Positions 9,283 to 31,299 are shown, counted from the first letter of the stretch. The stretch is 38,638 nt of DNA from Macrostomum lignano (GCA_002269645.1 NIVC01004666.1:1-38638); one strand, 5' to 3'. The notes: generated by a model from the letters alone, not told the origin. Numbers and translations are program-made.

Positions 9283-9312
9283 TACAAACCTTAGAGATTT
9301 AGTATATTTAGA
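9283..9312 (-). other. 30-bp spacer resembling a second Helitron 5' end (second copy at 12904-12933)
   Basis: Minus strand TCTAAATATACTAAATCTCTAAGGTTTGTA starts with TC, resembles the family start TCCTATATACTAAA, and ends in A. Confidence 0.65.
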
Positions 9313-9462
9313 CTAGCAATCTTCGCCCCCCGATGGGGGACATCTGGATAGAATCTCTGTTCTCTACAAGTAACAAAAAGACAGCCAGAAAATCCTTCAC
9401 AAAGACAACAGACAAACTGCTCAAATGAAGTGAATTGCAATAAGAAATCTTCCCAAGACCAC

Positions 9463-10140
9463 AAGCATCCCCCAGATAGCAAGCATTCCCCGGATAGCAA
9501 GCATCCCTCAAATAGCAAGCATCCCCCAGATAGCAAGCATTCCCCAGATAGCAAGCATCCCTCAAATAGCAAGCATCCCCCAGATAGCAAGCATCCCCAG
9601 ATAGCAAGCATCCCCCAGATAGCAAGCATCCCCCAGATAGCAAACATCCCCCAGATAGCAAGCATCCCCCAGATAGCAAGCATTCCCCAGATAGCAAACA
9701 TTCCCCAGATAGCAAGCATTCCCCAGATAGCAAGCATCCCTCAGATAGCAAGCATACCCCAAATAGCAAGCATCCCTCAGATAGCAAGCATCCCTCAGAT
9801 AGCAAGCATCCCCCAGATAGCAAGCATCACTCAGATAGCAAGCATCCCTCAGATAGCAAGCATCCACCAGATAGCAAGCATCCCTCAGATAGCAAGCATC
9901 CCCCAAATTGCAAGCATCGCCCAGATAGCAAGCATCCCCCAGAAAGCAAGCATCCTCCAAATAGCAAGCATCCCCCAGATAGCAAGCATCACTCAGATAG
10001 CAAGCATCCCTCAGATAGCAAGCATCCACCAGATAGCAAGCATCCCTCAGATAGCAAGCATCCCCCAAATTGCAAGCATCGCCCAGATAGCAAGCATCCC
10101 CAGAAAGCAAGCATCCCCCAAATAGCAACCATCCACCAGA
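9463..10140. repeat. 18-bp minisatellite A (GATAGCAAGCATCCCCCA), about 37 units
   Basis: Tandem units with 17-bp variants; source of the PQIASI/GCLLSG/DACYLG ORFs. Confidence 0.95.
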
Positions 10141-10238
10141 CAAAAAGTAGCTAGAGCGACAATTTCCTTAGCTTTATAGTGGCTCCTTTAAATTGGCATG
10201 GCGCTTTATACCTTTACATTTGAAATTGTATATCTTGA

Positions 10239-12311
10239 ATGTTTGACATGGTGGCTCTTTTATGTTTGACATGGTGGCTCTTTATTGTTCGACATGGTGG
10301 CTTTTTTATGTTTGACATGGTGGCTCTTGTATGTTCGACATGGTGGCTCTTTTAATGGTCGACATGGTGGCTCTTTAATGTTCTTCATGTTGGCTCTTTT
10401 ATGTTTGACATGCTGGCTTTTTTATGTTTGACATGGTGGCTCTTTTATGTTCGACATGGTGGCTCTTTTATGTTCTACATGGCTGCTCTTTTATGTTCGA
10501 CATGGTGGCTCTTGTATGTTCGACATGGTCGCTCTTTTGGGTTTGAAATGGTGGCTCTTTAATATTTGACAAGGTGGCCCTTTAATGTTTAACATGGTGG
10601 CTCTTTAAATTTCGAAATGGTGGCTCCTTAATTTTCGAAATGGTGGCTGTTTTATGTTTGACATGGTGGCTCTTTAATGTTCGACATGGTGGCTCTTTAA
10701 TGTTCTTAATGGTGTCTGTTTTATGTTTGACATGGTGGCTCTTTATTGTTCGACATGGTGGCTCTTTAGTTTTCGAAATGGTGGCTGTTTTATGTTTGAC
10801 ATGGTGGCTCTTTAATATTTGACAAGGTGGCCCTTTAATGTTTAACATGGTGGCTCTTTAATTTTCGAAATGGTGGCTCCTTAATTTTCGAAATGGTGGC
10901 TCTTTTATGTTTGACATGGTGGCTCTTTAATGTTCGACATGGTGGCTCTTTAATGTTCGACATGGTGGCTCTTTAATGTTCTTAATGGTGTCTGTTTTAT
11001 GTTCGACATGGTGGCTCTTTTATGTTCGACATGGTGGCTCTTTAATGTTCGACATGGTGGCTCATTTAGGTTTGAAATGGTGGCTCTTTAATGTTTGACA
11101 TTGTGGCTCTTTAATATTGGACAAGGTGGCTCTTTAATGTTCGACATGGTGGCTCCTTAATTTTCGAAATGGTGGCTCCTTAATTTTCGAAATGGTGGCT
11201 GCTTTATGTTTGACATGGTGGCTCTTTAATGTTTGACATGGTAACTCTTTTATGTTTGATATGGTGGCTCTTTTATGTTCGACATGGTGGCTCTTTAATG
11301 TTCGACATGGTGGCTCCTTTAGGTTTGAAATGGTGGCTCTTTAATGTTTGACATTGTGGCTCTTTTATGTTCGACATGGTGGCTCTTTTAGGTTTGACAT
11401 GGTGACTCTTAAATGTTTGACATGGTGGCTCTTTAATGTTTCACATGGTGGCTCTTTAATATTTGACATAAAGTCACATATATGTTTGACATGGTGGCTC
11501 CTAAATGTTTGACATGGTGGCTCTTTAATGTTCGACATGGTGGCTCCTTAATTTTCGAAATGGTGGCTCCTTAATTTTCGAAATGGTGGCTGCTTTATGT
11601 TTGACATGGTGGCTCTTTAATGTTTGACATGGTAACTCTTTTATGTTTGATATGGTGGCTCTTTTATGTTCGACATGGTGGCTCTTTAATGTTCGACATG
11701 GTGGCTCCTTTAGGTTTGAAATGGTGGCTCTTTAATGTTTGACATTGTGGCTCTTTTATGTTCGACATGGTGGCTCTTTTAGGTTTGACATGGTGACTCT
11801 TAAATGTTTGACATGGTGGCTCTTTAATGTTTCACATGGTGGCTCTTTAATATTTGACATAAAGTCACATATATGTTTGACATGGTGGCTCCTAAATGTT
11901 TGACATGGTGGCTCTTTATGTTTGACATGGTGGCTCTTTTATGTTCGACATGGTGGATCTTTTTTGTTCTACATGGTAACTCTTTTATGTTTGATACGGT
12001 GGCTTTTGAATGTCTGACATGTTGGCTCTTTTATGTTTGACATGGTGGCTCTTAATTGTTTGACATAGTGGCTCTTTAATGTTCAAAATGGTGGCTCTTT
12101 AATGTTCGAAATGGTGGCTCTTTAATGTTCGAAATGGTGGCTGTTTTATGTTTGACATGGTGGCTCTTTTATGTTTGACATGGTGGCTCTTTAATGTTCG
12201 ACATGGTAGCTCTTTAATGTTCGACATGGTAGCTCTTTTATGTTTGACATGGTAACTCTTTTATGTTCGATATGTTGGCTCTTCTATGTTTGACATTGCG
12301 CTTCTTTGATG
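10239..12311. repeat. 23-bp minisatellite B, about 90 units, with a 391-bp (17-mer) internal duplication
   Basis: The variant ATTTGACATAAAGTCACATA recurs at 11461 and 11852. Confidence 0.95.
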
Positions 12312-12367
12312 TTTAGCAGTTTTGTTGTGTTTTTAAGGTGTTTTAATAAAAAAATCTTTTTGCACTA

Positions 12368-12428
12368 CTATGATTCGAACCCAGGTCGCTACATTAGCAT
12401 TCCAGTCTGTTCGCATCAGGGCTATCTC
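12368..12428 (-). pseudogene. tRNA-derived (Ser-GCT-like) Pol III unit remnant in El2
   Basis: Minus strand TAGCCCTGATG (A-box-like) ... GAATGCTAATG ... GGGTTCGAATC (B-box), followed by T7. Confidence 0.6.
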
Positions 12429-13082
12429 TTTTCAATTGGAGAACATGAATTGTGGCCCTTATAATTCAATTCTTACAGCAAGTCAATTGGAGTAAAAAGT
12501 TATGACATAATCAATTTCTCAGTCAGCCAGTATCAGTCTCAATTTAAGTTAGCAATATGGTTACGCAATTTAAATCAAGTCGTGTGTGCATTTCTTCGGT
12601 ACTGTTTTTAACTTGTTGTGATGCAATCTTTATCACAATCGGAATTCAGTCAGTCAGTTTTTTCTCTAGCATTCTTACAATGCATTTCAGGTCGAAAGAG
12701 CTGCTTGACCTTTGCAAAAAAGCATGTTTTTCGAATATTTAATCCCTTTAAAATTGAGCAATTTCTTAGCCAAGATGCATGTACCGTCCCAGGAAAATTT
12801 CTGATCGAATGGTGCAAGTTTGAAGAAAATCGGTTGAGCCATTTTTTCTGAAATCTATCGCATACCTACCCACATACAGACAACTCATTTTTAGTATATA
12901 GGATACAAACCTTAGAGATTTAGTATATTTAGACTAGCAATCTTCGCCCCCGATGGGGGACATCTGGATAGAATCTCTGTTCTCTACAAGTAACAAAAAG
13001 ACAGCCAGAAAATCCTTCACAAAGACAACAGACAAACTGCTCAAATGAAGTGAATTGCAATAAGAAATCTTCCCAAGACCAC

Positions 13083-13752
13083 AAGCATCCCCAGATAGCA
13101 AGCATTCCCCGGATAGCAAGCATCCCTCAAATAGCAAGCATCCCCCAAGCAAATTCCCCAGATAGCAAGCATCCCTCAAATAGCAAGCATCCCCCAGATA
13201 GCAAGCATCCCCCAGATAGCAAGCATCCCCCAGATAGCAAGCATCCCCCAGATAGCAAGCATCCCCCAGATAGCAAGCATCCCCCAGATAGCAAGCATTC
13301 CCCAGATAGCAAACATTCCCCAGATAGCAAGCATTCCCCAGATAGCAAGCATCCCTCAGATAGCAAGCATACCCCAAATAGCAAGCATCCCTCAGATAGC
13401 AAGCATCCCTCAGATAGCAAGCATCCCCAGATAGCAAGCATCACTCAGATAGCAAGCATCCCTCAGATAGCAAGCATCCACCAGATAGCAAGCATCCCTC
13501 AGATAGCAAGCATCCCCCAAATTGCAAGCATCGCCCAGATAGCAAGCATCCCCCAGAAAGCAAGCATCCTCCAAATAGCAAGCATCCCCCAGATAGCAAG
13601 CATCACTCAGATAGCAAGCATCCCTCAGATAGCAAGCATCCACCAGATAGCAAGCATCCCTCAGATAGCAAGCATCCCCAAATTGCAAGCATCGCCCAGA
13701 TAGCAAGCATCCCCAGAAAGCAAGCATCCCCCAAATAGCAACCATCCACCAG
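13083..13752. repeat. 18-bp minisatellite A in El3
   Basis: Tandem GATAGCAAGCATCCCCCA units. Confidence 0.95.
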
Positions 13753-13851
13753 ACAAAAAGTAGCTAGAGCGACAATTTCCTTAGCTTTATAGTGGCTCCT
13801 TTAAATTGGCATGGCGCTTTATACCTTTACATTTGAAATTGTATATCTTGA

Positions 13852-15924
13852 ATGTTTGACATGGTGGCTCTTTTATGTTTGACATGGTGGCTCTTTATTG
13901 TTCGACATGGTGGCTTTTTTATGTTTGACATGGTGGCTCTTGTATGTTCGACATGGTGGCTCTTTTAATGGTCGACATGGTGGCTCTTTAATGTTCTTCA
14001 TGTTGGCTCTTTTATGTTTGACATGCTGGCTTTTTTATGTTTGACATGGTGGCTCTTTTATGTTCGACATGGTGGCTCTTTTATGTTCTACATGGCTGCT
14101 CTTTTATGTTCGACATGGTGGCTCTTGTATGTTCGACATGGTCGCTCTTTTGGGTTTGAAATGGTGGCTCTTTTATATTTGACAAGGTGGCCCTTTAATG
14201 TTTAACATGGTGGCTCTTTAAATTTCGAAATGGTGGCTCCTTAATTTTCGAAATGGTGGCTGTTTTATGTTTGACATGGTGGCTCTTTAATGTTCGACAT
14301 GGTGGCTCTTTAATGTTCTTAATGGTGTCTGTTTTATGTTTGACATGGTGGCTCTTTATTGTTCGACATGGTGGCTCTTTAGTTTTCGAAATGGTGGCTG
14401 TTTTATGTTTGACATGGTGGCTCTTTAATATTTGACAAGGTGGCCCTTTAATGTTTAACATGGTGGCTCTTTAATTTTCGAAATGGTGGCTCCTTAATTT
14501 TCGAAATGGTGGCTCTTTTATGTTTGACATGGTGGCTCTTTAATGTTCGACATGGTGGCTCTTTAATGTTCGACATGGTGGCTCTTTAATGTTCTTAATG
14601 GTGTCTGTTTTATGTTCGACATGGTGGCTCTTTTATGTTCGACATGGTGGCTCTTTAATGTTCGACATGGTGGCTCATTTAGGTTTGAAATGGTGGCTCT
14701 TTAATGTTTGACATTGTGGCTCTTTAATATTGGACAAGGTGGCTCTTTAATGTTCGACATGGTGGCTCCTTAATTTTCGAAATGGTGGCTCCTTAATTTT
14801 CGAAATGGTGGCTGCTTTATGTTTGACATGGTGGCTCTTTAATGTTTGACATGGTAACTCTTTTATGTTTGATATGGTGGCTCTTTTATGTTCGACATGG
14901 TGGCTCTTTAATGTTCGACATGGTGGCTCCTTTAGGTTTGAAATGGTGGCTCTTTAATGTTTGACATTGTGGCTCTTTTATGTTCGACATGGTGGCTCTT
15001 TTAGGTTTGACATGGTGACTCTTAAATGTTTGACATGGTGGCTCTTTAATGTTTCACATGGTGGCTCTTTAATATTTGACATAAAGTCACATATATGTTT
15101 GACATGGTGGCTCCTAAATGTTTGACATGGTGGCTCTTTAATGTTCGACATGGTGGCTCCTTAATTTTCGAAATGGTGGCTCCTTAATTTTCGAAATGGT
15201 GGCTGCTTTATGTTTGACATGGTGGCTCTTTAATGTTTGACATGGTAACTCTTTTATGTTTGATATGGTGGCTCTTTTATGTTCGACATGGTGGCTCTTT
15301 AATGTTCGACATGGTGGCTCCTTTAGGTTTGAAATGGTGGCTCTTTAATGTTTGACATTGTGGCTCTTTTATGTTCGACATGGTGGCTCTTTTAGGTTTG
15401 ACATGGTGACTCTTAAATGTTTGACATGGTGGCTCTTTAATGTTTCACATGGTGGCTCTTTAATATTTGACATAAAGTCACATATATGTTTGACATGGTG
15501 GCTCCTAAATGTTTGACATGGTGGCTCTTTATGTTTGACATGGTGGCTCTTTTATGTTCGACATGGTGGATCTTTTTTGTTCTACATGGTAACTCTTTTA
15601 TGTTTGATACGGTGGCTTTTGAATGTCTGACATGTTGGCTCTTTTATGTTTGACATGGTGGCTCTTAATTGTTTGACATAGTGGCTCTTTAATGTTCAAA
15701 ATGGTGGCTCTTTAATGTTCGAAATGGTGGCTCTTTAATGTTCGAAATGGTGGCTGTTTTATGTTTGACATGGTGGCTCTTTTATGTTTGACATGGTGGC
15801 TCTTTAATGTTCGACATGGTAGCTCTTTAATGTTCGACATGGTAGCTCTTTTATGTTTGACATGGTAACTCTTTTATGTTCGATATGTTGGCTCTTCTAT
15901 GTTTGACATTGCGCTTCTTTGATG
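13852..15924. repeat. 23-bp minisatellite B in El3
   Basis: Copy of 10239-12311. Confidence 0.95.
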
Positions 15925-15980
15925 TTTAGCAGTTTTGTTGTGTTTTTAAGGTGTTTTAATAAAAAAATCTTTTTGCACTA

Positions 15981-16041
15981 CTATGATTCGAACCCAGGTC
16001 GCTACATTAGCATTCCAGTCTGTTCGCATCAGGGCTATCTC
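15981..16041 (-). pseudogene. tRNA-derived Pol III unit remnant in El3
   Basis: Identical to 12368-12428. Confidence 0.6.
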
Positions 16042-16663
16042 TTTTCAATTGGAGAACATGAATTGTGGCCCTTATAATTCAATTCTTACAGCAAGTCAAT
16101 TGGAGTAAAAAGTTATGACATAATCAATTTCTCAGTCAGCCAGTATCAGTCTCAATTTAAGTTAGCAATATGGTTACGCAATTTAAATCAAGTCGTGTGT
16201 GCATTTCTTCGGTACTGTTTTTAACTTGTTGTGATGCAATCTTTATCACAATCGGAATTCAGTCAGTCAGTTTTTTCTCTAGCATTCTTACAATGCATTT
16301 CAGGTCGAAAGAGCTGCTTGACCTTTGCAAAAAAGCATGTTTTTCGAATATTTAATCCCTTTAAAATTGAGCAATTTCTTAGCCAAGATGCATGTACCGT
16401 CCCAGGAAAATTTCTGATCGAATGGTGCAAGTTTGAAGAAAATCGGTTGAGCCATTTTTTCTGAAATCTATCGCATACCTACCCACATACAGACAACTCA
16501 TTTTTAGTATATAGGACTAGCAATCTTCGCCCCCCGATGGGGGACATCTGGATAGAATCTCTGTTTTCTAAAGTAACAAAAAGACAGCCAAAAATCCTTC
16601 AAAAAGACAACAGACAAACTGCTCAAATGAAGTGCATTGCAAAAGAAATCATCCCAAGACTGC

Positions 16664-17090
16664 AAGCATCCCCCAGATAGCAAGCATCCCCTAGATAGCA
16701 AGCATCCCCAAGATGGCAAGCATCCCCCAGATAGCAAGCATCCCCAGATTGCAAGCATCCCCCAGATAGCAAGCATCCCCAAGATAGCAAGCATCCCTCA
16801 GATAGCAAGCATCCCCCAGATAGCAAGCATCCCCCAGATAGCAAGCATCCCCCAGATAGCAAGCATCCCCCAGAAAGCAAGCATCCCTCAGATAGCAAGC
16901 ATCCCCCAGATAGCAAGCATCCCCCAGATAGCAAGCATCCCCCAGATAGCAAGCATCCCCCAGATAGCAAGCATCCCCCAGATAGCAAGCATCCCCCAGA
17001 TAGCAAGCATCCCCCAGATAGCAAGCATCCCCCAGATAGCAAGCATCCCCAAGATAGATAGCATCCCCAAATAGCAAGCATCCACCAGAC
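16664..17090. repeat. 18-bp minisatellite A in El4
   Basis: Tandem units. Confidence 0.95.
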
Positions 17091-17179
17091 AATAAGTAGC
17101 TAGTGCGACAATTTCCTTAGCATTATAGCGGCTCCTTTAAAATTCGCTTACTTTTACGTTTGAAATTGTGTATCTTTTT

Positions 17180-19305
17180 ATGTTTAACAGGGTGGCTCTT
17201 TTATGTTCTACGCTCGTACATGGTAACTCTTTTATGTTTGATACGGTGGCTTTTCAATGTCTGACATAGTGGCTCTTCTATGTTTGACATGGGGGCTCTT
17301 CTATGTTTGACATGGGGGCTCTTCTATGTTTGACATGGGGGCTCTTCTATGTTTGACATGGGGGCTCTTCTATGTTTTACAAAGTGGCTTTTTAATGTTC
17401 AAAAAGGTGGCTCTTTTATGTTTGACATGGTGGCTCTTTAATGTTTGGCATGATGGCTCTTTAATGTTTGACATGGTGGCTCTTTAATGTTAGACAAAGT
17501 AGCTCTTTAATGTTTGACATGGTGGCTCTTTAATGTTAGACAAAGTAGCTCTTTAATGTTGATGGCTCTTTAATGACATGGTGGCTCTTTAATGTAGACA
17601 TGGTGGCTCTTTAATGTTCGACATTGACTTATATGTTTGACATGATGGCTCTTTAATGTTTACATGGTGGCTCTTTAATGTTTGACATGGTGCTCTTTAA
17701 TGTTCGACATGGTCTCTTAATGTTCGACATGGTGGCTCTTTTATGTTCGACATGGTGTCGCTTCAATGTTTGACATGGAGTTACGTATATGTTTTACATG
17801 GTGGCTCTTTATGTTCGACGTGGTGGCTCTTTAATGTTTGACATGGGTCTCTTCAATGTTTGACATGGAGTTACGTATATGTTTGACATGGTGGCTCTTT
17901 AATGTTTTACATGGTGGCACTTTCATGTTTGACCTGGTGGCTCTTAAATGTTTGACATGGTGGCTCTGTAATGTTTGACATGGTGTCTCTTTAACGTTTG
18001 ACATAGAGTCATGTATATGTTTGACATGGTGGCTCTTAAATGTTTGACATGGTGGCTCTTTAATATTTGACATGGTGGCCCTTTTATGTTCGACATGGTG
18101 GCTCTTTAATGTTTGACATGGAGTCATTATATATGTTTGACCTGGTGGCTCTTGTATTTTTAACACGTTGGCTCTTTAATGTTCGACATGGTGGCTCTTA
18201 AATGTCTAACATGGAGTCACGTATATGTTTGACATGGAGTCATGTATATGTCTGGTATGGTAGCTCTTAATGTTTTACATGGAGTCACCTATATGTTTCA
18301 CATGGTGGCTATTTTATGTTTGACATGGTGCTTCTTAAATGTTCGACATGGTGGCTCTTTAATGTTTTACATGGTGGCACTTTCATGTTTGACCTGGTGG
18401 CTCTTTAATGTTTGACATGGTGGCTCTTTAATATTTGACATGGTGGCCCTTTTATGTTCGACATGGTGGCTCTTTAATGTTTGACATGGAGTCATGTATA
18501 TGTTTGACCTGGTGGCTCTTTAATGTTTGACATGGTGGCTCTTTAATGTTTTACATGGTGGCACTTTCATGTTTGACCTGGTGGCTCTTTAATGTTTGAC
18601 ATGGTGGCTCTTTAATATTTGACATGGTGGCCCTTTTATGTTCGACATGGTGGCTCTTTAATGTTTGACATGGAGTCATGTATATGTTTGACCTGGTGGC
18701 ACTTTCATGTTTGACCTGGTGGCTCTTTAATGTTTGACATGGTGGCTTTTTAATATTTGACATGGTGGCACTTTCATGTTTGACCTGGTGGGTCTTTAAT
18801 GTTTGACATGGTACCTCTTTTATTTTCGACATGGTGGCTCTTTAATGTTTTACATGGTGGCTCTTTAATGTTTGACATGGTGGCTCTTTAATGTTTGATA
18901 AGGTGGCTCTTTAATGTTTGACATGGTGGCTCTTTAATATTTGACAAGGTGGCTCTTTAATGTTTAAAATGGTGGCTCTTTAATGTTCGAAATGGTGGCT
19001 GTTTTATGTTTGACATGGTGGCTCTTTAATGTTCGACATGGTGGCTCTTTAATGTTCTTAATGGTGTCTGTTTTATGTTTGACCTGGCGGCTCTTTAATG
19101 TTTGACATGGTGGCTTTTTAATGTTCGACATGGTGGCTCTTTTAGTTTGAAATGGTAACTCTTTATGTTTGACATGGTGGCTCTTTTATGTTCGACATGG
19201 TGGCTCTTTAATGTTTGACATTGTGGCTCTTTAATGTTTGAAATGGTGGCTCTTTAATGTTTGACACTCTTTACTCTTTAATGTTTCGACATGGTGGCTC
19301 TTTAA
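17180..19305. repeat. 23-bp minisatellite B in El4 (includes GGAGTCATGTATATG variant units)
   Basis: Tandem units. Confidence 0.95.
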
Positions 19306-19360
19306 TGTTGAGAATTTTGTGTTTTTTAACGTGTTTTAATAAAAAAAACATTTTTCACCA

Positions 19361-19420
19361 CTAAGATTCGAACCAAGGTCGCTACATTAGCATTCCAGTC
19401 TGTTTGCATCCGGCTATCTC
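19361..19420 (-). pseudogene. tRNA-derived Pol III unit remnant in El4
   Basis: Minus strand TAGCCGGATGC...GCTAATG...TTGGTTCGAATC, followed by T8. Confidence 0.55.
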
Positions 19421-20736: not shown

Positions 20737-20802
20737 CTGTAGATTCTTACTCGACGCCAACTTAAGATATCCAAACAAATTAATCAGAAATCAAACTTAA
20801 TC

Positions 20803-21351: not shown

Positions 21352-21387
<36 letters not shown>

Positions 21388-21766: not shown

Positions 21767-21852
21767 CTTATGCAACTTATGCAAATATATTTTGAAATTT
21801 GAAATTTGCTGAACAGAGTGTGCTTTCTGACCTTTCTCCTTTGAATTAGTGT

Positions 21853-22250
21853 AGAGCAGACATAATCAATTTCTCTATTATTATTAAAGTTAACAATATG
21901 GTTACGCAATATAAATTGAGTACTGTGCTATGCTTTCACACTCAACGCTGTGACGCAATTCAATTGAGTGTCTTGTGTATTGTGATGCAATCTATTTTAG
22001 AATCAGAATTCAACCAGTCAGTTTTTCTGCTAGCATTCTTACAATGCATTTCGATGCTTGACCTTTGCAAAAAAGCATGTTTTTCGAATATTTAATCCCT
22101 TTAGCATCGAGCAATTTCTTAGCCACGATGCATGTACCGTCACGGAAAAATTTCTGATCGATTGGTGCAAGTTCGAAGAAAATCGGTTGAGCCGTTTTTG
22201 CTAAAATCGATCACACACACACACACACACACACACATACCGACAGACCA
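21853..22250 (-). mobile_element. Helitron core fragment El5 (El6 subfamily), lacking the terminal ~15 bp of the 5' end and any 3' end
   Basis: Shares the El6-type deletion (CATTTCGATGCTTGACC) and a (CA)n tract at 22212-22237. Diverges from El6 right after GACAGACCA. Confidence 0.75.
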
Positions 22251-22561
22251 CTGTAGCCCAGTGTAGTGTAGCACAGCCATTGGCGGAAACTAATAGAACA
22301 AAAGCAATCTAGTGCGGCCCCCCTTGGGGGCGCCCAATAAGAACGAAGCAAAAATAGTTTATGGAAATCAATGAAAAAGCACATTTTCGTAAAAACCAAG
22401 TCCTTCATCACTTTTAAAATTCACCTTATTCATTTAAAATTGTCATGGACAATAATATTTGCTATGAATCTCTTTTTTTCTAAAATTAACAAACAGACAA
22501 GAAAATATAGCTTTCACAAAGATCACAGTCATTACCCCTAAATAGAAAATATTCCCAAGAC

Positions 22562-23240
22562 AGCAAGCATCCCCCCAGTAGCAAGCACCCGCCTCCAAAA
22601 GTAAACAACCGCAGATAGCAAGCATCCACCCAGATAGCAAGCATCCACCCAGATAGCAAGCATCTGCAGATAGCAAGCATCTGCAGATAGCAAGCATCTT
22701 GCAGATAGCAAGCATCTTGCAGATAGCAAGCATCCCCCAAATAGAAGCATCCCCCGGATAAAAGCATCCACCCAGATAGCAAGCATCCCCCAAATAATGT
22801 AGAAGCATCCTTCCAGATAGCAAGCATCCCCCAAATAATGTAGAAGCATCCTTCCAGATAGCAAGCATCCCCCAAATAATGTAGAAGCATCCTTCCAGAT
22901 AGCAAGCATCCCCCAAATAATGTAGAAGTATCCTTCCAGATAGCAAGCATCCCCCAAATAATGTAGAAGCATCCTTCAAGATAGCAAGCATCCCCCAAAT
23001 ATTGTAGAAGCATCCACCCAGATAGCAAGCATCCCCCAAATAATGTAGAAGCATCCTTCCAGATAGCAAGCATCCCCCAAATAATGTAGAAGCATCCTTC
23101 CAGATAGCAAGCATCCCCAAAATAATGTAGAAGCATCCTTCCAGATAGCAAGCATCCCCCAAATAATGTAGAAGCATCCTTCCAGATAGCAAGCATCCTG
23201 CACATAGCAAGAATCCCTAAATAGCAAGCATCCCTGGATA
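22562..23240. repeat. SatA derivative evolving into a 41-bp dimeric unit
   Basis: Unit GATAGCAAGCATCCCCCAAATAATGTAGAAGCATCCTTCCA; AGAAGCATC recurs at 22801 and 22842. Confidence 0.9.
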
Positions 23241-23276
23241 GAAATAATCCTATACATGTAGCCAAGCGTATCAAGC

Positions 23277-26200
23277 GCAGTAATCCTTGGCTATGGAGTG
23301 AAGTAATCCTTGGTTTATTAAGACCAATAATCTTTGACTTATCGAGTGCAGTAATCCTTGGTTTATTAATAGTAATAATCCTTGGCTTCTCGAGTGCAGT
23401 AATCCTTGGTTTTCCAAGTGCAGTAATCCTTGGTTTATTAAGAGCAATAATCCTTGGCTTATCGAGTGCATTAATCCTTGGTTTATTAATAGCAATAATC
23501 CTTGGCTTCTCGAGTGCAGTAATCCTTGGTTTGCCAAGAGCAATAGTCCTTGGTTTATCGAGTGCAGTAATCCTTAGTTTATTAATAGCAATAATCCTTG
23601 ATTAATCAAGTGCAATAATCCTTGGCTTATCGAGTGCAGTAATCCTTAGTTTATTAATAGCAATAATCCTTGGCTTATCGAGTGCAGTAATCCTAGGTTT
23701 ATTAATAGCAGTAATCCTTGATTAATCAAATGCAGTAATCCTTGGTTTGCCAAGAGCAATAGTCCTTGGTTTATCGAGAGCAGTAATCCTTACTTTATTA
23801 ATAGCAATAGTCCTTGGCTTATCGAGTGCAGTAATCCTTAGTTTATTAATAGCAGTAATCCTTGATTAATCAAGTGCAGTAATCCTTGGTTTATTAATAG
23901 CAATAATCCTTGGCTTATCGAGTGCAGTAATCCTTGGTTTTCCAAGTGCAGTAATCCTTGGTTTATTAATAGCAGTAATCCTTGATTAATCAAATGCAGC
24001 AATCCTTGGTTTGCCAAGAGCAATAGTCCTTGGTTTATCGAGAGCAGTAATCCTTAGTTTATTAAGAGCAATAATCCTTGGCTTATCGAGTGCAGTAATC
24101 CTTGGTTTATTAATAGCAATAATCCTTGGCTTCTCGAGTGCAGTAATCCTTGGTTTTCCAAGTGCAGTAATCCTTGGTTTATTAAGAGCAATAATCCTTG
24201 GCTTCTCGAGTGCAGTAATCCTTGGTTTTCCAAGTGCAGTAATCCTTGGTTTATTAAGAGCAATAATCCTTGGCTTATCGAGTGCAGTAATCCTTGGTTT
24301 GCCAAGAGCAATAGTCCTTGGTTTATCGAGTGCAGTAATCCTTAGTTTATTAATAGCAATAATCCTTGATTAATCAAGTGCAATAATCCTTGGCTTATCA
24401 AGTGCAGTAATCCTTGGTTTATTAATAGCAATAATCCTTGGCTTCTCGAGTGCAGTAATCCTTGGTTTTCCAAGTGCAGTAATCCTTGGTTTATTAAGAG
24501 CAATAATCCTTGGCTTCTCGAGTGCAGTAATCCTTGGTTTTCCAAGTGCAGTAATCCTTGGTTTATTAAGAGCAATAATCCTTGGCTTATCGAGTGCAGT
24601 AATCCTTGGTTTGCCAAGAGCAATAGTACTTGGTTTATCGAGTGCAGTAATCCTTAGTTTATTAATAGCAATAATCCTTGATTAATCAAGTGCAATAATC
24701 CTTGGCTTATCGAGTGCAGTAATCCTTGGTTTTCCAAGTGCAGTAATCCTTGGTTTATTAATAGCAGTAATCCTTGATTAATCAAATGCAGCAATCCTTG
24801 GTTTGCCAAGAGCAATAGTCCTTGGTTTATCGAGAGCAGTAATCCTTAGTTTATTAAGAGCAATAATCCTTGGCTTATCGAGTGCAGTAATCCTTGGTTT
24901 ATTAATAGCAATAATCCTTGGCTTCTCGAGTGCAGTAATCCTTGGTTTTCCAAGTGCAGTAATCCTTGGTTTATTAAGAGCAATAATCCTTGGCTTCTCG
25001 AGTGCAGTAATCCTTGGTTTTCCAAGTGCAGTAATCCTTGGTTTATTAAGAGCAATAATCCTTGGCTTATCGAGTGCAGTAATCCTTGGTTTGCCAAGAG
25101 CAATAGTCCTTGGTTTATCGAGTGCAGTAATCCTTAGTTTATTAATAGCAATAATCCTTGATTAATCAAGTGCAATAATCCTTGGCTTATCAAGTGCAGT
25201 AATCCTTGGTTTATTAATAGCAATAATCCTTGGCTTCTCGAGTGCAGTAATCCTTGGTTTTCCAAGTGCAGTAATCCTTGGTTTATTAAGAGCAATAATC
25301 CTTGGCTTCTCGAGTGCAGTAATCCTTGGTTTTCCAAGTGCAGTAATCCTTGGTTTATTAAGAGCAATAATCCTTGGCTTATCGAGTGCAGTAATCCTTG
25401 GTTTGCCAAGAGCAATAGTACTTGGTTTATCGAGTGCAGTAATCCTTAGTTTATTAATAGCAATAATCCTTGATTAATCAAGTGCAATAATCCTTGGCTT
25501 ATCAAGTGCAGTAATCCTTGGTTTATTAATAGCAATAATCCTTGGCTTATCGAGTGCAGTAATCCTAGGTTTATTAATAGCAGTAATCCTTGATTAATCA
25601 AATGCAGTAATCCTTGGTTTGCCAAGAGCAATAGTCCTTGGTTTATCGAGAGCAGTAATCCTTACTTTATTAATAGCAATAATCCTTGGCTTATCGAGTG
25701 CAGTAATCCTTAGTTTATTAATAGCAGTAATCCTTGATTAATCAAATGCAGTAATCCTTGGTTTATTAAGAGCAATAATCCTTGGCTTATCGAGTGCAGT
25801 AATCCTTAGTTTATTAATAGCAATAATCCTTGATTAATCAAGTGCAGTAATCCTTGGTTTATTAATAGCAATAATCCTTGGCTTATCGAGTGCAGTAATC
25901 CTTGGTTTTCCAAGTGCAGTAATCCTTGGTTTATTAATAGCAGTAATCCTTGATTAATCAAATGCAGCAATCCTTGGTTTGCCAAGAGCAATAGTCCTTG
26001 GTTTATCGAGAGCAGTAATCCTTAGTTTATTAAGAGCAATAATCCTTGGCTTCTCGAGTGCAGTAATCCTTGGTTTTCCAAGTGCAGTAATCCTTGGTTT
26101 ATTAAGAGCAATAATCCTTGGCTTCTCGAGTGCAGTAATCCTTGGTTTTCCAAGTGCAGTAATCCTTGGTTTATTAAGAGCAATAATCCTTGGCTTATCG

Positions 26201-27172
26201 AGTGCAGTAATCCTTGGTTTGCCAAGAGCAATAGTCCTTGGTTTATCGAGTGCAGTAATCCTTAGTTTATTAATAGCAATAATCCTTGATTAATCAAGTG
26301 CAATAATCCTTGGCTTATCAAGTGCAGTAATCCTTGGTTTATTAATAGCAATAATCCTTGGCTTCTCGAGTGCAGTAATCCTTGGTTTTCCAAGTGCAGT
26401 AATCCTTGGTTTATTAAGAGCAATAATCCTTGGCTTCTCGAGTGCAGTAATCCTTGGTTTTCCAAGTGCAGTAATCCTTGGTTTATTAAGAGCAATAATC
26501 CTTGGCTTATCGAGTGCAGTAATCCTTGGTTTGCCAAGAGCAATAGTACTTGGTTTATCGAGTGCAGTAATCCTTAGTTTATTAATAGCAATAATCCTTG
26601 ATTAATCAAGTGCAATACTCCTTGGCTTATCAAGTGCAGTAATCCTTGGTTTATTAATAGCAATAATCCTTGGCTTATCGAGTGCAGTAATCCTAGGTTT
26701 ATTAATAGCAGTAATCCTTGATTAATCAAATGCAGTAATCCTTGGTTTGCCAAGAGCAATAGTCCTTGGTTTATCGAGAGCAGTAATCCTTACTTTATTA
26801 ATAGCAATAATCCTTGGCTTATCGAGTGCAGTAATCCTAGGTTTATTAATAGCAGTAATCCTTGATTAATCAAATGCAGTAATCCTTGGTTTGCCAAGAG
26901 CAATAGTCCTTGGTTTATCGAGAGCAGTAATCCTTACTTTATTAATAGCAATAATCCTTGGCTTATCGAGTGCAGTAATCCTTGGTTTATTAATAGCAAT
27001 AATCCTTGGCTTATCGAGTGCAGTAATCCTTGGTTTATTAAGAGCAATAATTCTTGGCTTATCGAGTGCAGTAATCCTTAGTTTATTAATAGCAATAATC
27101 CTTGATTAATCAAGTGCAGTAATCCTTGGTTTATTAATAGCAATAATCCTTGGCTTATCGAGTGCAGTAATC
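23277..27172. repeat. 24-bp minisatellite D (GCAGTAATCCTTGGTTT-based), about 160 units, with 792-bp block duplication
   Basis: Tandem units; identical ORFs recur at offsets 792 (33x24) and 1968 (82x24). Confidence 0.95.
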
Positions 27173-27270
27173 TAAGTTTTGTTTTATTAAACGACTAAAT
27201 GTTTTATTAAAGAACTAAATATTTAATAAAAGCTTTTAATAAAAATTTTTACACTACTACTTTTAAACTA

Positions 27271-27333
27271 CTTAGATTCGAAACCAGGTCGCTGCATTAG
27301 CAGTCTCGTCTGTTCAGCTCTAGGCTAGCTCTC
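27271..27333 (-). pseudogene. tRNA-derived Pol III unit remnant in El6
   Basis: Minus strand TAGCCTAGAGC...GACTGCTAATG...TGGTTTCGAATC, followed by T5. Confidence 0.55.
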
Positions 27334-27816
27334 ATCGAAGTTATCAGTGAATTTGTACCACTTATATAATTCAACACTCACACCAAGTCAGTTAGAGTAA
27401 AAAGTCACACGAAGCAGTTATGACATAATCAATTTCTTAGGCAAGTCATTACCAGTGTCTATGAAAGTTAACAAATGGTAACGTAATATAAATTGGGTAC
27501 TGCGCTATGCTTTCACACTCAAAGCTGTGACGCAATTCAATTGAGTGTCAAATTCAGCCAGTACACAGACGATAAATAAAGTGTATTGTGATGCAATCTA
27601 TTTCAGAATCAGAATTCAACCAGTCAGTTTTTCTGCTAGCATTCTTACAATGCATTTCGATGCTTGACCTTTGCAAAAAAGCATGTTTTTCGAATATTTA
27701 ATCCCTTTAGCATCGAGCAATTTCTTAGCCACGATGCATGTACCGTCACGGAAAAATTTCTGATCGAATGGTGCAAGTTCGAAGAAAATCGGTTGAGCCG
27801 TTTTTGCTAAAATCGA

Positions 27817-27817
<1 letters not shown>

Positions 27818-27851
<34 letters not shown>
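27818..27851. repeat. (CA)n microsatellite near the 5' end of El6
   Basis: Directly visible. Confidence 0.95.
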
Positions 27852-27854
<3 letters not shown>

Positions 27855-27879
27855 CGACAGACCATTTTTAGTATATGGA

Positions 27880-29765
27880 CTAGCAATCTTCGCCCCCCGT
27901 TGGGGGATATCTGGATAGAATCTCTGTTCTCTACAAGTAACAAAAAGACAGCCAAATAAAGCCTTCACAAAGACAACACAAAAAACTGCTCAAATAAAGT
28001 GTAATGCAAAAAGAAATCATCTCAAGACAGCAAGCATCCCCCAGATTGCAAGCATCCCTCAAATAGCAAGCATCCCCCAGATAGCAAGCATCCCCCAGAT
28101 AGCAAGCATCCCCCAGATAGCAAGCGTCCCCCAGATAGCAAGCATCCCCCAGATAGCAAGCATTCCCCAGATAGCAAGCATCCCCCAAATAGCAAGCATC
28201 CCCCAAATAGCAAGCATCCCCCAGATAGCAAGCATCCCCCAGATAGCAAGCATCCCCCAGATAGCAAGCATCCCCCAAATAGCAAGCATCCCCCAGATAG
28301 CAAGCATCCCCCAAATAGCAAGCATCCCCCAGATAGGAAGCATCCCCCCTCCCAGATAGCAAACATCCCCCAGATAGCAAGCATCCCCCAGATAGCAAGC
28401 ATCCCCCAAATAGCAAGCATCCCCCAGATAGCAAGCATCCCCCAAATAGCAAGCATCCCCCAGATAGGAAGCATCCCCCCTCCCAGATAGCAAGCATCCC
28501 CCAGATAGCAAGCATCCCCAAATAGTAAGCATCCACCAGACAATAAGTAGCTAGTGCAACAATTTCCTTAGCTCTATAGTGGCTCCTTAAAAATTGACAT
28601 GACGCTTACTTTTACGTTTGAAATTGTTTCTTATGTTTGACATGGTGGCTCTTTAATGTTCGACATGGTGTCTCTTTAATGTTTGACATGGTGGTCCTTT
28701 TATGTTTGACATGGTGGCTCTTTAATTTTTGACATGGTGGCTCCTTTATGTTTGGCATGATGGCCCTTTAATGTTCTACATGGTAGCTCTTTTATTTTCG
28801 ACATGGTGGCACTTTAATGTTTGGCATGATGGCTCTTTGATGTTGGACATGGTGGTCCTTTTATGTTTGACGTGATGGCTCTTTAATGTTTGACCTGGTG
28901 GCACCTTAATGTCTGTAATGATGGCTCTTTAATGTTTGAAATGGTGGCTCTTTAATATTTGACATGGTGGCTCTTTAATGTTTGACATGGTGGCTCTTTA
29001 ATGTTCGACATGGTGGCTCTTTAATGTTCGACATGGTGGCTTTTTAATGTTCGACATGGTGGCTCTTAAATGTTAGACATGGTGGCTCTTTAATGTTCGA
29101 CATGGTGGCTCTTTAATGGTCGACATGGTGGCTCTTTACTGGTCGACATGGTGGCTCTTTAATGTTTGACATTGTGCTTTTTTGTGTTTAGCATTTTGTG
29201 TTTTTAAGGTTTTTGAATAAAAAAATCTTTTTGCACTACTAAGATTCGAACCCAGATCGCTGCATTAGCAGTCCAGTCTGTTCGCATCTATGCTATCTCT
29301 TTTCAATTGGAGATCATGAATTGTGGCCCTTATAATTAAATTCTTATAGCAAATCGGTTAGAGTAAAAAGTAATGACATAATCAATTTCTCAGTCAGCCA
29401 GTATCAGTGTCAATTCAAGTTAGCAATATTGTTACGCAATTTAAATCAAGTTTTGTGTGCATTTGTTCGGCACTGTTTTCAACTGGTTGTGATGTAATCT
29501 TTATCACAATTGGAATTCAGTCAGTCAGTTTTTTCTCTAGCATTCTTACAATGCATTTCAGGTCGAAAGAGCTGCTTGACCTTTGCAAAAAAGCATGTTT
29601 TTCGAATATTTAATCCCTTTAATATTGAGCAATTTCTTAGCCAGGATGCATGTACCGTGCCAGGAAATTTCTGATCAAATGGTGCAAGTTTGAAGAAAAT
29701 CGGTTGAGCCAATTTTTCTGAAATCTATCGCATACCGACAGACAACTCATTTTTAGTATATTGGA
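27880..29765 (-). mobile_element. Non-autonomous Helitron El7 (1886 bp) with short satA and satB arrays
   Basis: CTAG|TC junctions at both ends (27880/27879 and 29766/29765). Hairpin CCCCCC-GTT-GGGGG. SatA at 28031-28540, satB at 28631-29180. Confidence 0.9.
29239..29299 (-). pseudogene. tRNA-derived Pol III unit remnant in El7 (best preserved copy)
   Basis: Minus strand GAGATAGCATAGATGCGAACAGACTGGACTGCTAATGCAGCGATCTGGGTTCGAATC, followed by T7. Confidence 0.65.
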
Positions 29766-31240
29766 CTAGCAATCTACGCCCCCGTTGGGGAGCCAAAGAA
29801 ATGCAATACACGTATTTTTAATAAGCTACATGTAGCCTTGAAATCTTAAAAAATCTCCTGTCAAAATTCTAACCCTAACCAAAACCCTAAATTCAATATT
29901 TTGTCCATGAGTTTTTGCATGATCGATGCTTCTATGATTTTTGGCATGACGCTTCCATTGTTTTTGCATGACGCTTCCATTATTTTTGCATGATGCTTCC
30001 ATGATAAACATTTTTAATAAGCTAAATGAGTTAAGTTATAAGCTACCCTAACCCTAACCCTAACCCGAATCTTAACGCAATAACCCTGAACCTAACCCTA
30101 AACCTAAACCCTAATACCAACCCTAACACTAACCCTACAGCCTGACATCTGCATAAGTTTGTGAAGAGCTAGTAGTATTTTTTAGCTTAGTATCTTAGCG
30201 TTAGGGAGCCAAAAATACAGTACAAGTTTTGTAATAAACTACATGTAGCATCTCTTTGCAATTTACCTCAGAAGTCCCTTGTAAGCCTTGAAATGTCAGT
30301 AATTCCCCCCACAAGCTTTAACAAATCAACTCCCCCCTTGACATCTCAGCGATGCCCCAAATAAGCCTTGAAGTCTAAAAAAATCTGTCAACCTTCTTAC
30401 CCTAACCCTAGCCTAACCCTAACCCTAACCCTAGCCTAACCCTAACCCTAACACTAACCTAACCCTAAAGCATTGAAATTTCAGTAATTCTGAGTCATTA
30501 TAGCACTACTACAGCGTTATAGCGATTCCCTCGTAGGGATTCCCAAATGAATCTCTTCGCTTCGACATGAAGCTTCTTTTATTTTTTACATTATGCTTTT
30601 TCTATCAGTGAGCCCTGAGGAGCCAACAAAAAATGTAATAAAAAGTTTTCATTAAACTACATGTAGCTTCTGACTTTAGCCTTGAAATCTCATTTATACC
30701 CCCGTGAGCCTTCACATCTCAGCTATTCCCCCCGTAAGCCTTGACATGTCAGCGATGCCCCCCATAAATCTTGAAATCTAAAAAAATCCCCTGTTAACCT
30801 TGAAACCCGATAAAATATAACCCTCAACCCACACCTGACCTAAACCTAACTTTAACCCAACCTAAAGCCTTGAAATCTCAGCAATTCTTCTCCCCTAAGC
30901 CTTGACATTTTAGTGTTTCCTTCTTTAAGAATCACAGCACTATAACGATTTCCACCAAGCTTTGACATTGTAGCAATTCCCAAATGAATCTTTTAACTTC
31001 GACATGACTTTTCTTATATGTATACATAGTGCTACTTTTATTTTTTACATGACTCTGCTTCTATCAGCGCCCCCCCTGTGGCGAGCCAACAATGAATGTA
31101 ATAAAAATTGAGTAAAGTACATGAACTTTGAAGTAGCTTCTGACTTTTGCTTTGACATCTCAGAAACCCCCCCCCCACCTGTAATCTCAGTTATTCTCTG
31201 TGAGCCTTGACGTCTCAGTAATTCTCCCCAGCACAGCACT
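29766..31240. repeat. Four diverged ~415-460-bp units with interspersed (CCCTAA)n-like tracts
   Basis: GAGCCAA...TACATG anchors at ~29790, 30205, 30619 and 31083. CCCTAA-like runs at ~29870, 30048-30135, 30398-30468 and 30817-30865. Confidence 0.7.
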
Positions 31241-31299
31241 GTACTATAGCTTCATTTAATTTTTATATGACACCTTTAATGTCTGACATGGCGCTTCTT

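What the first reader, a model, noticed from the sequence alone, without database searches (positions are those of the whole stretch)
9283..29770. Train of non-identical Helitrons joined by five exact CTAG|TC junctions: possible self-targeting into the 5' end of resident elements
Seen: exact 3'-CTAG to 5'-TC junctions with no intervening base at 9313/9312, 12934/12933, 16517/16516, 27880/27879 and 29766/29765. Neighbours El3/El4, El6/El7 and El7/El8 differ in length, core sequence and satellite type. Known: Helitrons insert between A and T, and rolling-circle replication of one template gives tandem copies of the same element. Inference: a mixed train cannot come from one circle. It follows naturally if a new copy uses the host-A|TC boundary of a resident Helitron as its A-T target, so the 5' end acts as an attachment site. 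Arrays would then grow in a polar, cassette-like way. Tandem Helitrons are described; strict heterologous 5'-end targeting would be the new part.
Basis: partly seen in the sequence, partly recalled or inferred. Interest (0 to 1): 0.85.

Follow-up and report, generated by a model that had tools for sequence, protein, structure and literature searches.

The report
Head-to-tail train of mixed Helitron transposons
The window is a one-way train of nine or so satellite-carrying Helitron transposons, several joined exactly end to start, which is best explained by new copies landing right at the ends of resident copies plus local duplication, a behaviour already reported for maize Helitrons in 2008.

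Summary
All five exact CTAG|TC junctions exist at the stated coordinates, on the minus strand, and they are far beyond chance. The units are true canonical-type Helitrons: 5' TC, 3' CTAG, and a GC hairpin 13 nt from the 3' end. One is a decayed RepHel/OTU autonomous copy whose Rep domain matches Helraiser.

Only four junctions are independent. Junction 12933/12934 is a copy of 9312/9313, made by a 3.6-kb tandem duplication (C and D are 99.75% identical). In both, the 5' partner is a 30-nt 5'-end stub, not a whole element. Junctions 27879/27880 and 29765/29766 join clearly different subfamilies. Junction 16516/16517 joins copies of one family about 8-12% apart. A sixth, imprecise head-to-tail joint lies at about 22250-22300.

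One circle cannot give this mix. End-adjacent integration, followed by unequal crossing-over, is the best reading. The window cannot tell insertion at the resident's 5' boundary from insertion at its 3' boundary. It also cannot test strictness or polar growth.

The central idea is not new. Du et al. 2008 described dissimilar head-to-tail maize Helitrons with this junction and proposed the same host-A plus resident-T target. No related loci could be retrieved. Verdict: a new family, probably from a Macrostomum-like flatworm, showing a known phenomenon unusually densely.

The parts
1..568 (-). 23-bp satellite (same family as in C, D, E, H) of a partial element A that is cut by the window start. 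The 557 bp that follow it (569-1125) are unrelated to the usual 5' region.
1126..1139 (+). 14-nt exact copy of G's 5' terminus (TCCATATACTAAAA) in the opposite orientation, preceded by A. It is either the stub of an inverted element or an inverted repeat of B. Unexplained.
1714..8013 (-). Coding part of autonomous-type Helitron B: STPR-like repeats, an OTU protease, Helitron_like_N (Rep) and a PIF1 helicase. The helicase reading frame is broken near 3041-3125 compared with an intact relative. No hairpin+CTAG 3' end was found.
8996..9282 (-). 5' terminal region of B (TCCTATATACTAAAAATGAG...), 98.6% identical to that of C and D.
9283..9312 (-). 30-nt stub f (TCTAAATATACTAAATCTCTAAGGTTTGTA) that resembles the first 30 nt of a related 5' end. 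It is the 5' partner in junction 1.
9313..12903 (-). Non-autonomous Helitron C: 3' CTAG and hairpin, 18-bp satellite, 92-bp spacer, 23-bp satellite, and a 589-bp 5' region.
12904..12933 (-). Second copy of stub f. It is the 5' partner in junction 2.
12934..16516 (-). Non-autonomous Helitron D, 99.75% identical to C. Its 5' TC is joined directly to E's CTAG (junction 3).
16517..19894 (-). Non-autonomous Helitron E, same family as C and D. It is 87.6% identical to D over the full length and 92-95% at the ends. Its 5' TC is preceded by A and then by unrelated sequence, so there is no junction here.
19895..22250 (-). Stretch F: unclassified sequence with a CCHC-like knuckle and a CAG/CAA tract. 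At its right end lies the 5' region of a further element, F2 (about 21860-22250, 97-99% identical to G), which lacks its terminal ~15 nt.
22251..22300 (.). 50-nt filler between F2's truncated 5' end and G's degenerate 3' end. This is an imprecise head-to-tail joint.
22301..27879 (-). Helitron G, a different subfamily. Its 3' hairpin is present but the terminus reads CTTT instead of CTAG. It has a ~120-bp insert before the hairpin, 18-bp-type satellite variants, a 24-bp satellite with a 240-bp higher-order repeat, and a (GT)n tract in the 5' region.
27880..29765 (-). Helitron H, a short copy of the C/D/E family. Its CTAG is joined to G's TC (junction 4) and its TC is joined to I's CTAG (junction 5).
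29766..38622 (-). Helitron I, a third subfamily. It shares only the last ~25 nt of the 3' end (hairpin+CTAG) and about 250-290 nt of the 5' region. It has four 3'-end-like modules with telomere-like CCCTAA tracts (29766-31285) and its own 23-bp satellite (31286-38024). Its 5' end, TCGTTTATAC.., is flanked by C.

Best explanation
The window is a co-oriented nest of canonical-type (Helraiser-like) Helitrons and their satellite-carrying non-autonomous derivatives. The heterologous exact junctions arose because the RepHel transposase integrates incoming copies exactly at a resident element's terminus. The most likely route is that it cuts the host-A|TC boundary of a resident 5' end, the same cut it makes to start transposition, and uses it as the A|T target. 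The result is host-A + new element (TC...CTAG) + TC-resident. A pre-existing CTAG|TC junction, in the chromosome or in a circle, would be an equally good substrate. The train was then remodelled by homologous events between the shared 5' regions. Unequal crossing-over between the identical terminal 160 nt of B and of the C/D ancestor duplicated a 3.6-kb unit together with its junction. Shown: the anatomy, the exact junctions, the heterology, the shared orientation and the duplication. Inferred: the integration mechanism and which side is targeted.
For: Helitron identity. Seven full 5' ends begin with TC and share ATATACTAAA. Five 3' ends carry ..CCCCC-loop-GGGGG(G)CG(A/T)AGATTGCTAG, with the 5-bp GC hairpin 13 nt from the end. 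B encodes Helitron_like_N, PIF1 and OTU, and its Rep region matches Helraiser 7LCC at E=5e-45.
The junction is a true module boundary. Homology breakpoints fall exactly on it in different combinations: D5'|E3', G5'|H3', H5'|I3', stub|C3', and E5'|unrelated DNA. I shares only the terminal ~25 nt of the 3' end, as expected if hairpin+CTAG is the functional terminator.
Not chance. p is about 1e-3 or less per insertion, the junction pattern has zero matches in shuffles, and all 5' terminal regions but one 14-nt stub point the same way.
Not one circle. H versus G is 84% and H versus I 82% in the 5' region. The 3' regions, inner sequence and satellites are unrelated or only distantly related.
Biochemical plausibility. 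Helraiser cuts between the flank and its 5' TC, prefers AT targets with an AT-rich 3' flank, forms circles with an exact CTAG|TC junction and cuts that junction precisely (PMC4778049; PMC5876387).
Precedent. Du et al. 2008 showed that dissimilar head-to-tail maize Helitrons with this junction arose by consecutive insertions.
Secondary duplication. C and D are 99.75% identical, similarity runs through the stub and junction, and B, C and D are identical over the terminal 160 nt.
Against: There is no empty site, no presence/absence polymorphism and no second locus, so no insertion event is demonstrated here. No 3' end in the window abuts host DNA, so the A|T rule is seen only at E's 5' flank (A). 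I's 5' flank is C. F2 and G are 97-99% identical in the 5' region and adjacent, and B, C and D are near-identical. Local duplication or concatemer formation therefore clearly contributes. E|D joins members of one family and could be an old dimer. The G|F2 joint is imprecise, which fits aberrant end-joining as well as later damage. Assembly errors in such repeats cannot be excluded.
Confidence: 0.55

Rival explanations
1. Rolling-circle concatemers plus in-situ evolution only. The train began as tandem copies of one or a few elements, produced by rolling-circle replication or read-through. It became mixed through satellite turnover, internal replacement, gene conversion and unequal crossing-over, with no end-targeted insertion.
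For: C and D are 99.75% identical tandem copies with a copied junction. F2 and G are adjacent and 97-99% identical at the 5' end. E and D have the same architecture and nearly the same 23-bp array length, 2092 versus 2082 bp. Tandem Helitron arrays attributed to rolling-circle amplification are known in bats and plants.
Against: H|G and I|H join elements whose similarity is confined to the termini, with sharp breakpoints exactly at the junction. I shares only ~25 nt at its 3' end, and G's 24-bp satellite is unrelated to the others. Uniform divergence of a concatemer would not give that mosaic. 5' regions at 82-86% identity are poor substrates for homologous exchange between arrays.
Confidence: 0.13
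2. Targeting of the resident's 3' end. Incoming elements integrate at the CTAG|T boundary, a non-canonical G|T target, so that trains grow at the 3' side.
For: It gives the same exact CTAG|TC junction and the same orientation. Du et al. 2008 considered this order equally possible, and it was the simpler reading of their inbred-line data, because the upstream element occurs alone. The transposase also recognises and cuts the 3' end.
Against: Among 1751 Helraiser insertions, AT was strongly preferred, and the listed exceptions were TT, AC and AA, not GT. Nothing in the window tells the two orders apart.
Confidence: 0.15
3. Hetero-multimers formed outside the chromosome. Either ends of different excised elements are joined in trans by the transposase, or one element integrates into the junction of another's circle. 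The mixed multimer then integrates, or transposes by 3'-end bypass, as one unit.
For: Circles with exact junctions are real intermediates and are cut at the junction. About half of recovered circle junctions are aberrant, which resembles the G|F2 joint with its filler and truncated ends.
Against: No hetero-multimeric circle has been reported in the papers read. This reading predicts that the same train recurs at other loci, which could not be checked.
Confidence: 0.1
4. Artefact or coincidence. The repeat-rich sequence was mis-assembled, or the junctions are chance adjacency in a dense transposon graveyard.
For: The region is almost entirely satellites and near-identical repeats. The differences between C and D are mostly homopolymer or satellite length changes.
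Against: Four independent base-exact junctions in one orientation have p < 1e-8 under random AT insertion, even within this window. The heterologous junctions lie in unique, non-satellite sequence.
Confidence: 0.04

Closest known systems
Adjacent dissimilar head-to-tail Helitrons in maize (Du, Caronna, He, Dooner 2008, PMC2267711)
   Same: The CTAG 3' end is joined directly to the TC 5' end, making a G/T junction with no host base. The partners are dissimilar, so they are not tandem repeats. The authors interpreted them as consecutive insertions and proposed the host-A plus resident-T target explicitly.
   Different: Maize has one pair carrying gene fragments, with presence/absence evidence. 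Here there are four independent junctions among about nine co-oriented, satellite-carrying elements in 38.6 kb, in an animal genome, with no polymorphism data.
Tandem Helitron arrays from rolling-circle amplification (bat Helibat, Pritham & Feschotte 2007; plant centromeric Helitrons, Xiong et al. 2016; as cited)
   Same: Exact head-to-tail junctions and a shared orientation. The C/D pair fits this class or unequal crossing-over.
   Different: Those arrays repeat the same element. Here G, H and I are different subfamilies.
Helraiser circle intermediates (Grabundzija et al. 2016, 2018)
   Same: The identical joint, 5' TC fused to CTAG 3', is made and re-cut by the transposase. B's Rep domain is clearly homologous.
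   Different: Those are extrachromosomal, single-element circles. Here the joint is chromosomal and lies between different elements.
Satellite-carrying Helitrons and Helentron derivatives that build repeat blocks (Paramecium chromosome-end Helitrons, PMC13085455; Hydractinia subtelomeric Helitron-like repeats, PMC11934779; DINE-1/HINE, PMC4067079)
   Same: Non-autonomous rolling-circle elements consisting largely of internal satellites, clustered locally and associated with telomere-type repeats.
   Different: Exact heterologous end-to-start junctions are not the described feature there. The elements here lack the subterminal inverted repeats and TT target of Helentrons.
Bacterial HUH transposons whose target equals their own end-cleavage site (IS608 TTAC; IS91 one-ended/tandem insertions). 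This comparison rests on my own knowledge plus the mention.
   Same: A single-strand HUH nuclease uses the same short sequence for donor-end cleavage and for target choice. This logically allows insertion right next to a resident copy.
   Different: Prokaryotic, different proteins, a defined tetranucleotide target. The analogy was not tested here.

Membership tests
Canonical Helitron (Helitron1/HLE1 type) | RepHel transposase (HUH Rep plus PIF1-like helicase) | tested here: met
   Element B has Helitron_like_N at E=3.6e-46, PIF1 at 3e-34 and 1e-19, and the Pif1 2B domain. Its Rep region matches Helraiser 7LCC at E=5e-45. The copy is decayed, with a frame break in the helicase.
Canonical Helitron (Helitron1/HLE1 type) | 5' TC terminus | tested here: met
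   B, C, D, E, G, H, I and stub f all begin with TC, followed by ..ATATACTAAA.
Canonical Helitron (Helitron1/HLE1 type) | 3' CTRR terminus preceded at about 10-15 nt by a short hairpin | tested here: met
   C, D, E, H and I end in CTAG, with a 5-bp GC stem 13 nt upstream. G has the hairpin but CTTT. B's 3' end was not found.
Canonical Helitron (Helitron1/HLE1 type) | Insertion between host A and T without target-site duplication | tested here: inconclusive
   E's 5' flank is A, but I's is C. No 3' end touches host DNA, and no empty site is available.
Canonical Helitron (Helitron1/HLE1 type) | No terminal inverted repeats | tested here: met
   The 3' 160 nt of C, D, E, H and I hold no inverted copy of the 5' terminus. 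One unexplained inverted 14-nt 5'-terminus copy lies beyond B's coding region at 1126-1139.
Helentron / Helitron2 (HLE2) and their HINE/DINE-1 derivatives | 12-15 bp subterminal inverted repeats, a 3' stem-loop, TT target, T-rich boundaries, and (for Helentron) an endonuclease after the helicase (PMC4067079) | tested here: not met
   The non-autonomous elements have no subterminal inverted repeats. E's flank is A, not T. B's helicase ORF ends at 1714 with no endonuclease domain after it. OTU and internal satellites are shared with Helentrons but do not define them.
Tandem Helitron concatemer (rolling-circle amplification) | Neighbouring units are copies of the same element joined CTAG|TC | tested here: not met
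   This is met only for C/D at 99.75%. It is not met for H|G and I|H. E|D is intermediate at 87.6% full length.
Consecutive end-adjacent Helitron insertions (Du et al. 2008) | Dissimilar partners at an exact CTAG|TC junction | tested here: met
   Junctions 27879/27880 and 29765/29766.
Consecutive end-adjacent Helitron insertions (Du et al. 2008) | Independent presence/absence of the two partners among haplotypes or strains | not testable with these tools
   No second copy of the locus or of the family could be retrieved.

The most novel reading that the evidence does not exclude
This Helitron family integrates preferentially, perhaps almost obligately, at the 5' boundary (or at existing CTAG|TC junctions) of resident family members, whatever their subfamily. 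The conserved ~290-nt 5' terminal region would then act as an attachment site, and mixed arrays would grow like cassette arrays. This would be a true site-specific mode for a eukaryotic rolling-circle transposon, and a mechanism for building Helitron/satellite blocks. In the window, all five canonical 3' ends (four independent) sit on a 5' end and none sits on host DNA.
Probability: 0.25. Interest if true: 0.7.

Novelty: new member of a known kind. Interest (0 to 1): 0.35.

Why it matters
If end-adjacent integration is a strong preference rather than an occasional event, it would explain how Helitrons nucleate the large, one-way Helitron/satellite blocks seen near chromosome ends and centromeres in several lineages. 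It would also give Helitrons a self-targeting 'safe haven' strategy. Finally, it would predict that the transposase's donor-end recognition doubles as target recognition, which can be tested directly with the Helraiser system. As it stands, the window adds a dense animal example and a new satellite-carrying family. It also shows that such trains are further expanded by unequal crossing-over. It does not establish a new principle.

Tried and rejected
1. Helentron/HINE classification. It was suggested by the satellites, the OTU domain and the TCCTATATACT-type 5' end. I rejected it because the non-autonomous elements have no subterminal inverted repeats, the ends are CTAG plus hairpin, E's flank is A, there is no endonuclease, and the Rep domain matches Helraiser strongly.
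2. Treating 16517-27879 as one 11-kb element. Rejected: it holds E, stretch F with truncated F2, a filler, and G.
3. Five independent junctions. Rejected: junction 2 is a copy of junction 1.
4. Finding B's 3' end, or the rest of the element cut by B. There is no hairpin+CTAG in 1-1713, and 569-1125 has no similarity to the family's 5' region, scoring no better than shuffles.
5. Getting more copies of the family to census what follows 3' ends. Protein-database searches with the ORF that reads through the 3' end and junction, and with the conserved 5'-region ORF, found no candidates. The metagenome scan for the 3' terminus gave two chance hits in unrelated GC-rich DNA. Exact look-ups of two window ORFs found nothing. 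Logan contigs of a related autonomous element (78% nt identity) and a Macrostomum lignano locus lack these termini.
6. Rfam and tRNA scans of the window found nothing.
7. Dating elements from satellite homogeneity or terminal decay to test polarity. I judged this too weak to use.
Full report
**Observation**

The hexamer GACTAG occurs five times on the + strand, at 9311, 12932, 16515, 27878 and 29764, and nowhere else in that orientation. Read on the - strand, each is ...hairpin-CGAAGATTGCTAG|TC(C/T).... This is a 3' CTAG fused without any spare base to a 5' TC, exactly at the coordinates given.

The flanks are long and conserved..TTTTTAGTATAT(N)GGA on one side and CTAGCAATCT(T/A)CGCCCCC(C)G(A/T)TGGGG on the other. 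A 22-nt junction pattern never occurs in 100 dinucleotide-preserving shuffles. The window has 3524 AT dinucleotides, so a random AT insertion has a chance of about 1e-3 or less of landing on a resident 5' boundary in the right orientation. Three or four independent hits give p < 1e-8.

**What the units are**

All elements lie on the - strand. A self-comparison with satellites masked, Tandem Repeats Finder and terminus scans give the following map in + coordinates.

| Unit | Coordinates | Notes |
|---|---|---|
| A | 1-568, plus 569-1125 | 23-bp satellite, cut by the window start, then unrelated sequence |
| B | about 1126-9282 | autonomous type |
| stub f | 9283-9312 | 30 nt |
| C | 9313-12903 | |
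| stub f again | 12904-12933 | |
| D | 12934-16516 | |
| E | 16517-19894 | |
| F | 19895-22250 | its right end is the 5' region of a further element, F2, lacking its last ~15 nt |
| filler | 22251-22300 | 50 nt |
| G | 22301-27879 | |
| H | 27880-29765 | |
| I | 29766-38622 | |

- **Shared architecture.** C, D, E and H have the same layout: a 3' end of about 150 bp, an 18-bp satellite, a 92-bp spacer, a 23-bp satellite and a 589-bp 5' region.
- **G.** It keeps an 18-bp-type satellite (16 of 18 identical) but carries an unrelated 24-bp satellite with a 240-bp higher-order repeat.
- **I.** It has its own 23-bp satellite, 15 of 23 identical to the C-H type.
- **5' ends.** Every full 5' end starts with TC followed by ..ATATACTAAA.
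- **3' ends.** C, D, E, H and I end in CTAG, with a 5-bp GC hairpin 13 nt upstream.
- **B's proteins.** B encodes STPR-like repeats, an OTU protease, Helitron_like_N and a PIF1 helicase. Its Rep region matches the Helraiser structure 7LCC at E=5e-45.
- **B is decayed.** Compared with a related intact 486-aa helicase ORF, B changes frame near 3041-3125.
- **Likely host.** The best protein relatives are from Macrostomum lignano (74-89% identity), so the host is probably a macrostomid flatworm or a near relative.

The non-autonomous elements have no subterminal inverted repeats. E's 5' flank is A, not T. No endonuclease follows the helicase. These are therefore canonical-type Helitrons, not Helentrons, despite the satellites and the OTU domain.

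**The junction is a true boundary**

The alternative would be that the real unit is circularly permuted, with CTAG|TC as an internal motif. It fails because homology breakpoints fall exactly on the junction in several different combinations. These are D's 5' end with E's 3' end, G's with H's, H's with I's, the stub with C's, and E's 5' end with unrelated DNA. In addition, I shares with the others only the last ~25 nt of the 3' end, that is, the hairpin and CTAG. This is what is expected of the minimal terminator.

**Independence and heterology of the junctions**

C and D are 99.75% identical over 3.6 kb. Nearly all differences are length changes in the 18-bp satellite and the C-run of the hairpin. 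The similarity runs through the stub and the junction: 8996-9461 versus 12617-13081 is 98.9% identical. B, C and D are identical over the terminal 160 nt of the 5' region.

The simplest history is an ancestral order B-f-X-E. Unequal crossing-over between the 5' regions of B and X then gave B-f-X-f-X-E. Junction 2 is therefore a copy of junction 1, and at most four junctions are independent. In both, the TC belongs to a 30-nt stub that looks like the first 30 nt of a related 5' end. B would then sit in the AT at position 30/31 of an older element. That is itself an insertion into a resident 5' terminal region, although the rest of that older element could not be recognised.

- **Junction 3 (E|D)** joins members of one family that are 87.6% identical overall and 92-95% identical at the ends.
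- **Junctions 4 (H|G) and 5 (I|H)** join different subfamilies. Their 5' regions are 82-86% identical, and their 3' regions, interiors and satellites are different.
- **A sixth joint, G|F2,** is imprecise. G ends in CTTT rather than CTAG, 50 nt of filler follow, and F2 lacks ~15 terminal nt. G and F2 are nonetheless 97-99% identical in the 5' region.

**Mechanism**

A concatemer of a single circle can explain C/D, possibly E/D and possibly G/F2. It cannot explain H|G or I|H. Something must therefore join the ends of different elements precisely and in one orientation.

The published biochemistry of Helraiser offers an obvious route:
- The transposase cuts between the flank and its own 5' TC.
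- It prefers A|T targets with an AT-rich sequence on the side that ends up 3' of the insert.
- It forms circles in which TC is fused to CTAG.
- It cuts that junction exactly.

A resident host-A|TC boundary is thus both a canonical A|T site and a sequence the enzyme already recognises. An insertion there yields host-A + new element + TC-resident, with the observed base-exact joint. I take this as the best explanation, with later unequal crossing-over, at a confidence of about 0.55.

Three variants cannot be excluded from this window:
- insertion at the resident's 3' boundary, a G|T target that is disfavoured by Helraiser target data but was left open by Du et al.;
- insertion into an existing junction;
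- formation of mixed multimers on circles.

The flanks predicted by the 5' and 3' variants are the same. Element ages cannot be estimated reliably without family consensus sequences. The claims of strictness and of polar growth are untested. The youngest event seen, the C/D duplication, is internal to the train.

**Comparison with what is known**

Du et al. [quoted passage not shown] They showed from inbred lines that the two are separate insertions. [quoted passage not shown]

Related findings were already in the literature:
- perfect head-to-tail bat Helitrons (Pritham and Feschotte 2007);
- rolling-circle concatemers in plants (Xiong et al. 2016);
- a general preference to insert near other Helitrons (Yang and Bennetzen 2009; all three as cited).

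Satellite-rich Helitron blocks near chromosome ends are described in Paramecium and in cnidarians. What this window adds is density, with four independent exact junctions among about nine co-oriented elements and every canonical 3' end capped by a 5' end. It also adds an animal host, a new satellite-carrying family, and clear evidence that recombination multiplies junctions.

**Limits**

I could not obtain any other copy of this family:
- Protein-database searches with the junction-spanning ORF and with the conserved 5'-region ORF found no candidates.
- The metagenome scan gave only chance hits.
- Exact ORF look-ups found nothing.
- Related Logan contigs and a Macrostomum lignano locus lack these termini.

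The decisive census and the presence/absence tests therefore remain to be done. Assembly correctness in this repeat-rich stretch is unverified.

**Verdict**

This is a known phenomenon in a new family, seen at unusual density. Interest is 0.35. The most novel reading still open is near-obligate, subfamily-independent targeting of resident 5' ends that builds cassette-like arrays. I give it a probability of about 0.25.

Noticed in passing
window 29766-31285: The 3' part of element I holds four 3'-end-like modules, starting at about 29766, 30199, 30600 and 31060. Each is followed by telomere-like CCCTAA-type tracts (for example 30045-30137 and 30399-30468) and a few 22-23-bp satellite monomers. 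Only the first module keeps hairpin+CTAG. It looks like serial duplication or bypass of 3' termini, and it hints at a subtelomeric origin.
   Followed up: partly
window 1126-1139 (+ strand): An exact 14-nt copy of G's 5' terminus (TCCATATACTAAAA) lies in the opposite orientation, preceded by A. It sits about 575 bp past the stop of B's helicase ORF. It could be the stub of an inverted element or an inverted terminal repeat of B. B has no recognisable hairpin+CTAG 3' end.
   Followed up: partly
window 9283-9312 and 12904-12933: A 30-nt stub, TCTAAATATACTAAATCTCTAAGGTTTGTA, resembles the first 30 nt of a related 5' end. It suggests that B inserted into the AT at position 30/31 of an older element's 5' terminal region.
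   Followed up: partly
window 1-1125: The 23-bp satellite (1-568) of the C/D/E/H type is followed by 557 bp with no similarity to the 589-bp 5' region that follows this satellite in the other copies.
   Followed up: partly
window 23269-27172: G's 24-bp satellite has a 240-bp (10-monomer) higher-order repeat, with about 16 higher-order units. It produces identical 120-aa ORFs at 24011 and 24803.
   Followed up: no
window 7519-8013 (- strand): B's N-terminal ORF consists of 69-bp coding repeats (7637-7925) and matches the Pfam STPR repeat family (E=7.7e-13). It lies upstream of an OTU-like protease ORF (6816-7271).
   Followed up: no
window 19895-22250: Stretch F, between E and the truncated F2 5' region, has a CCHC zinc-knuckle-like motif (about 21285-21335) followed by a CAG/CAA (polyQ) tract (21637-21754). 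It has no convincing Pfam domain. It could be a captured gene fragment inside F2 or host DNA.
   Followed up: partly
window 27826-27860 and 22212-22240: A (GT/CA)n microsatellite lies inside the 5' terminal region of G and F2 only, 20-60 nt from the 5' end. This shows that the terminal region tolerates insertions there.
   Followed up: no
window 38623: Element I's 5' end (TCGTTTATACTAAAAATG) is preceded by C rather than the canonical A. The window ends 16 nt later, so the flank cannot be characterised.
   Followed up: no
L001-L007 (Logan contigs, runs SRR316283xx-SRR316284xx): A related autonomous Helitron, about 78% nt identical to B, has an intact 486-aa helicase ORF and a downstream RPA-like (REPA_OB) ORF that B lacks.
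   Followed up: partly
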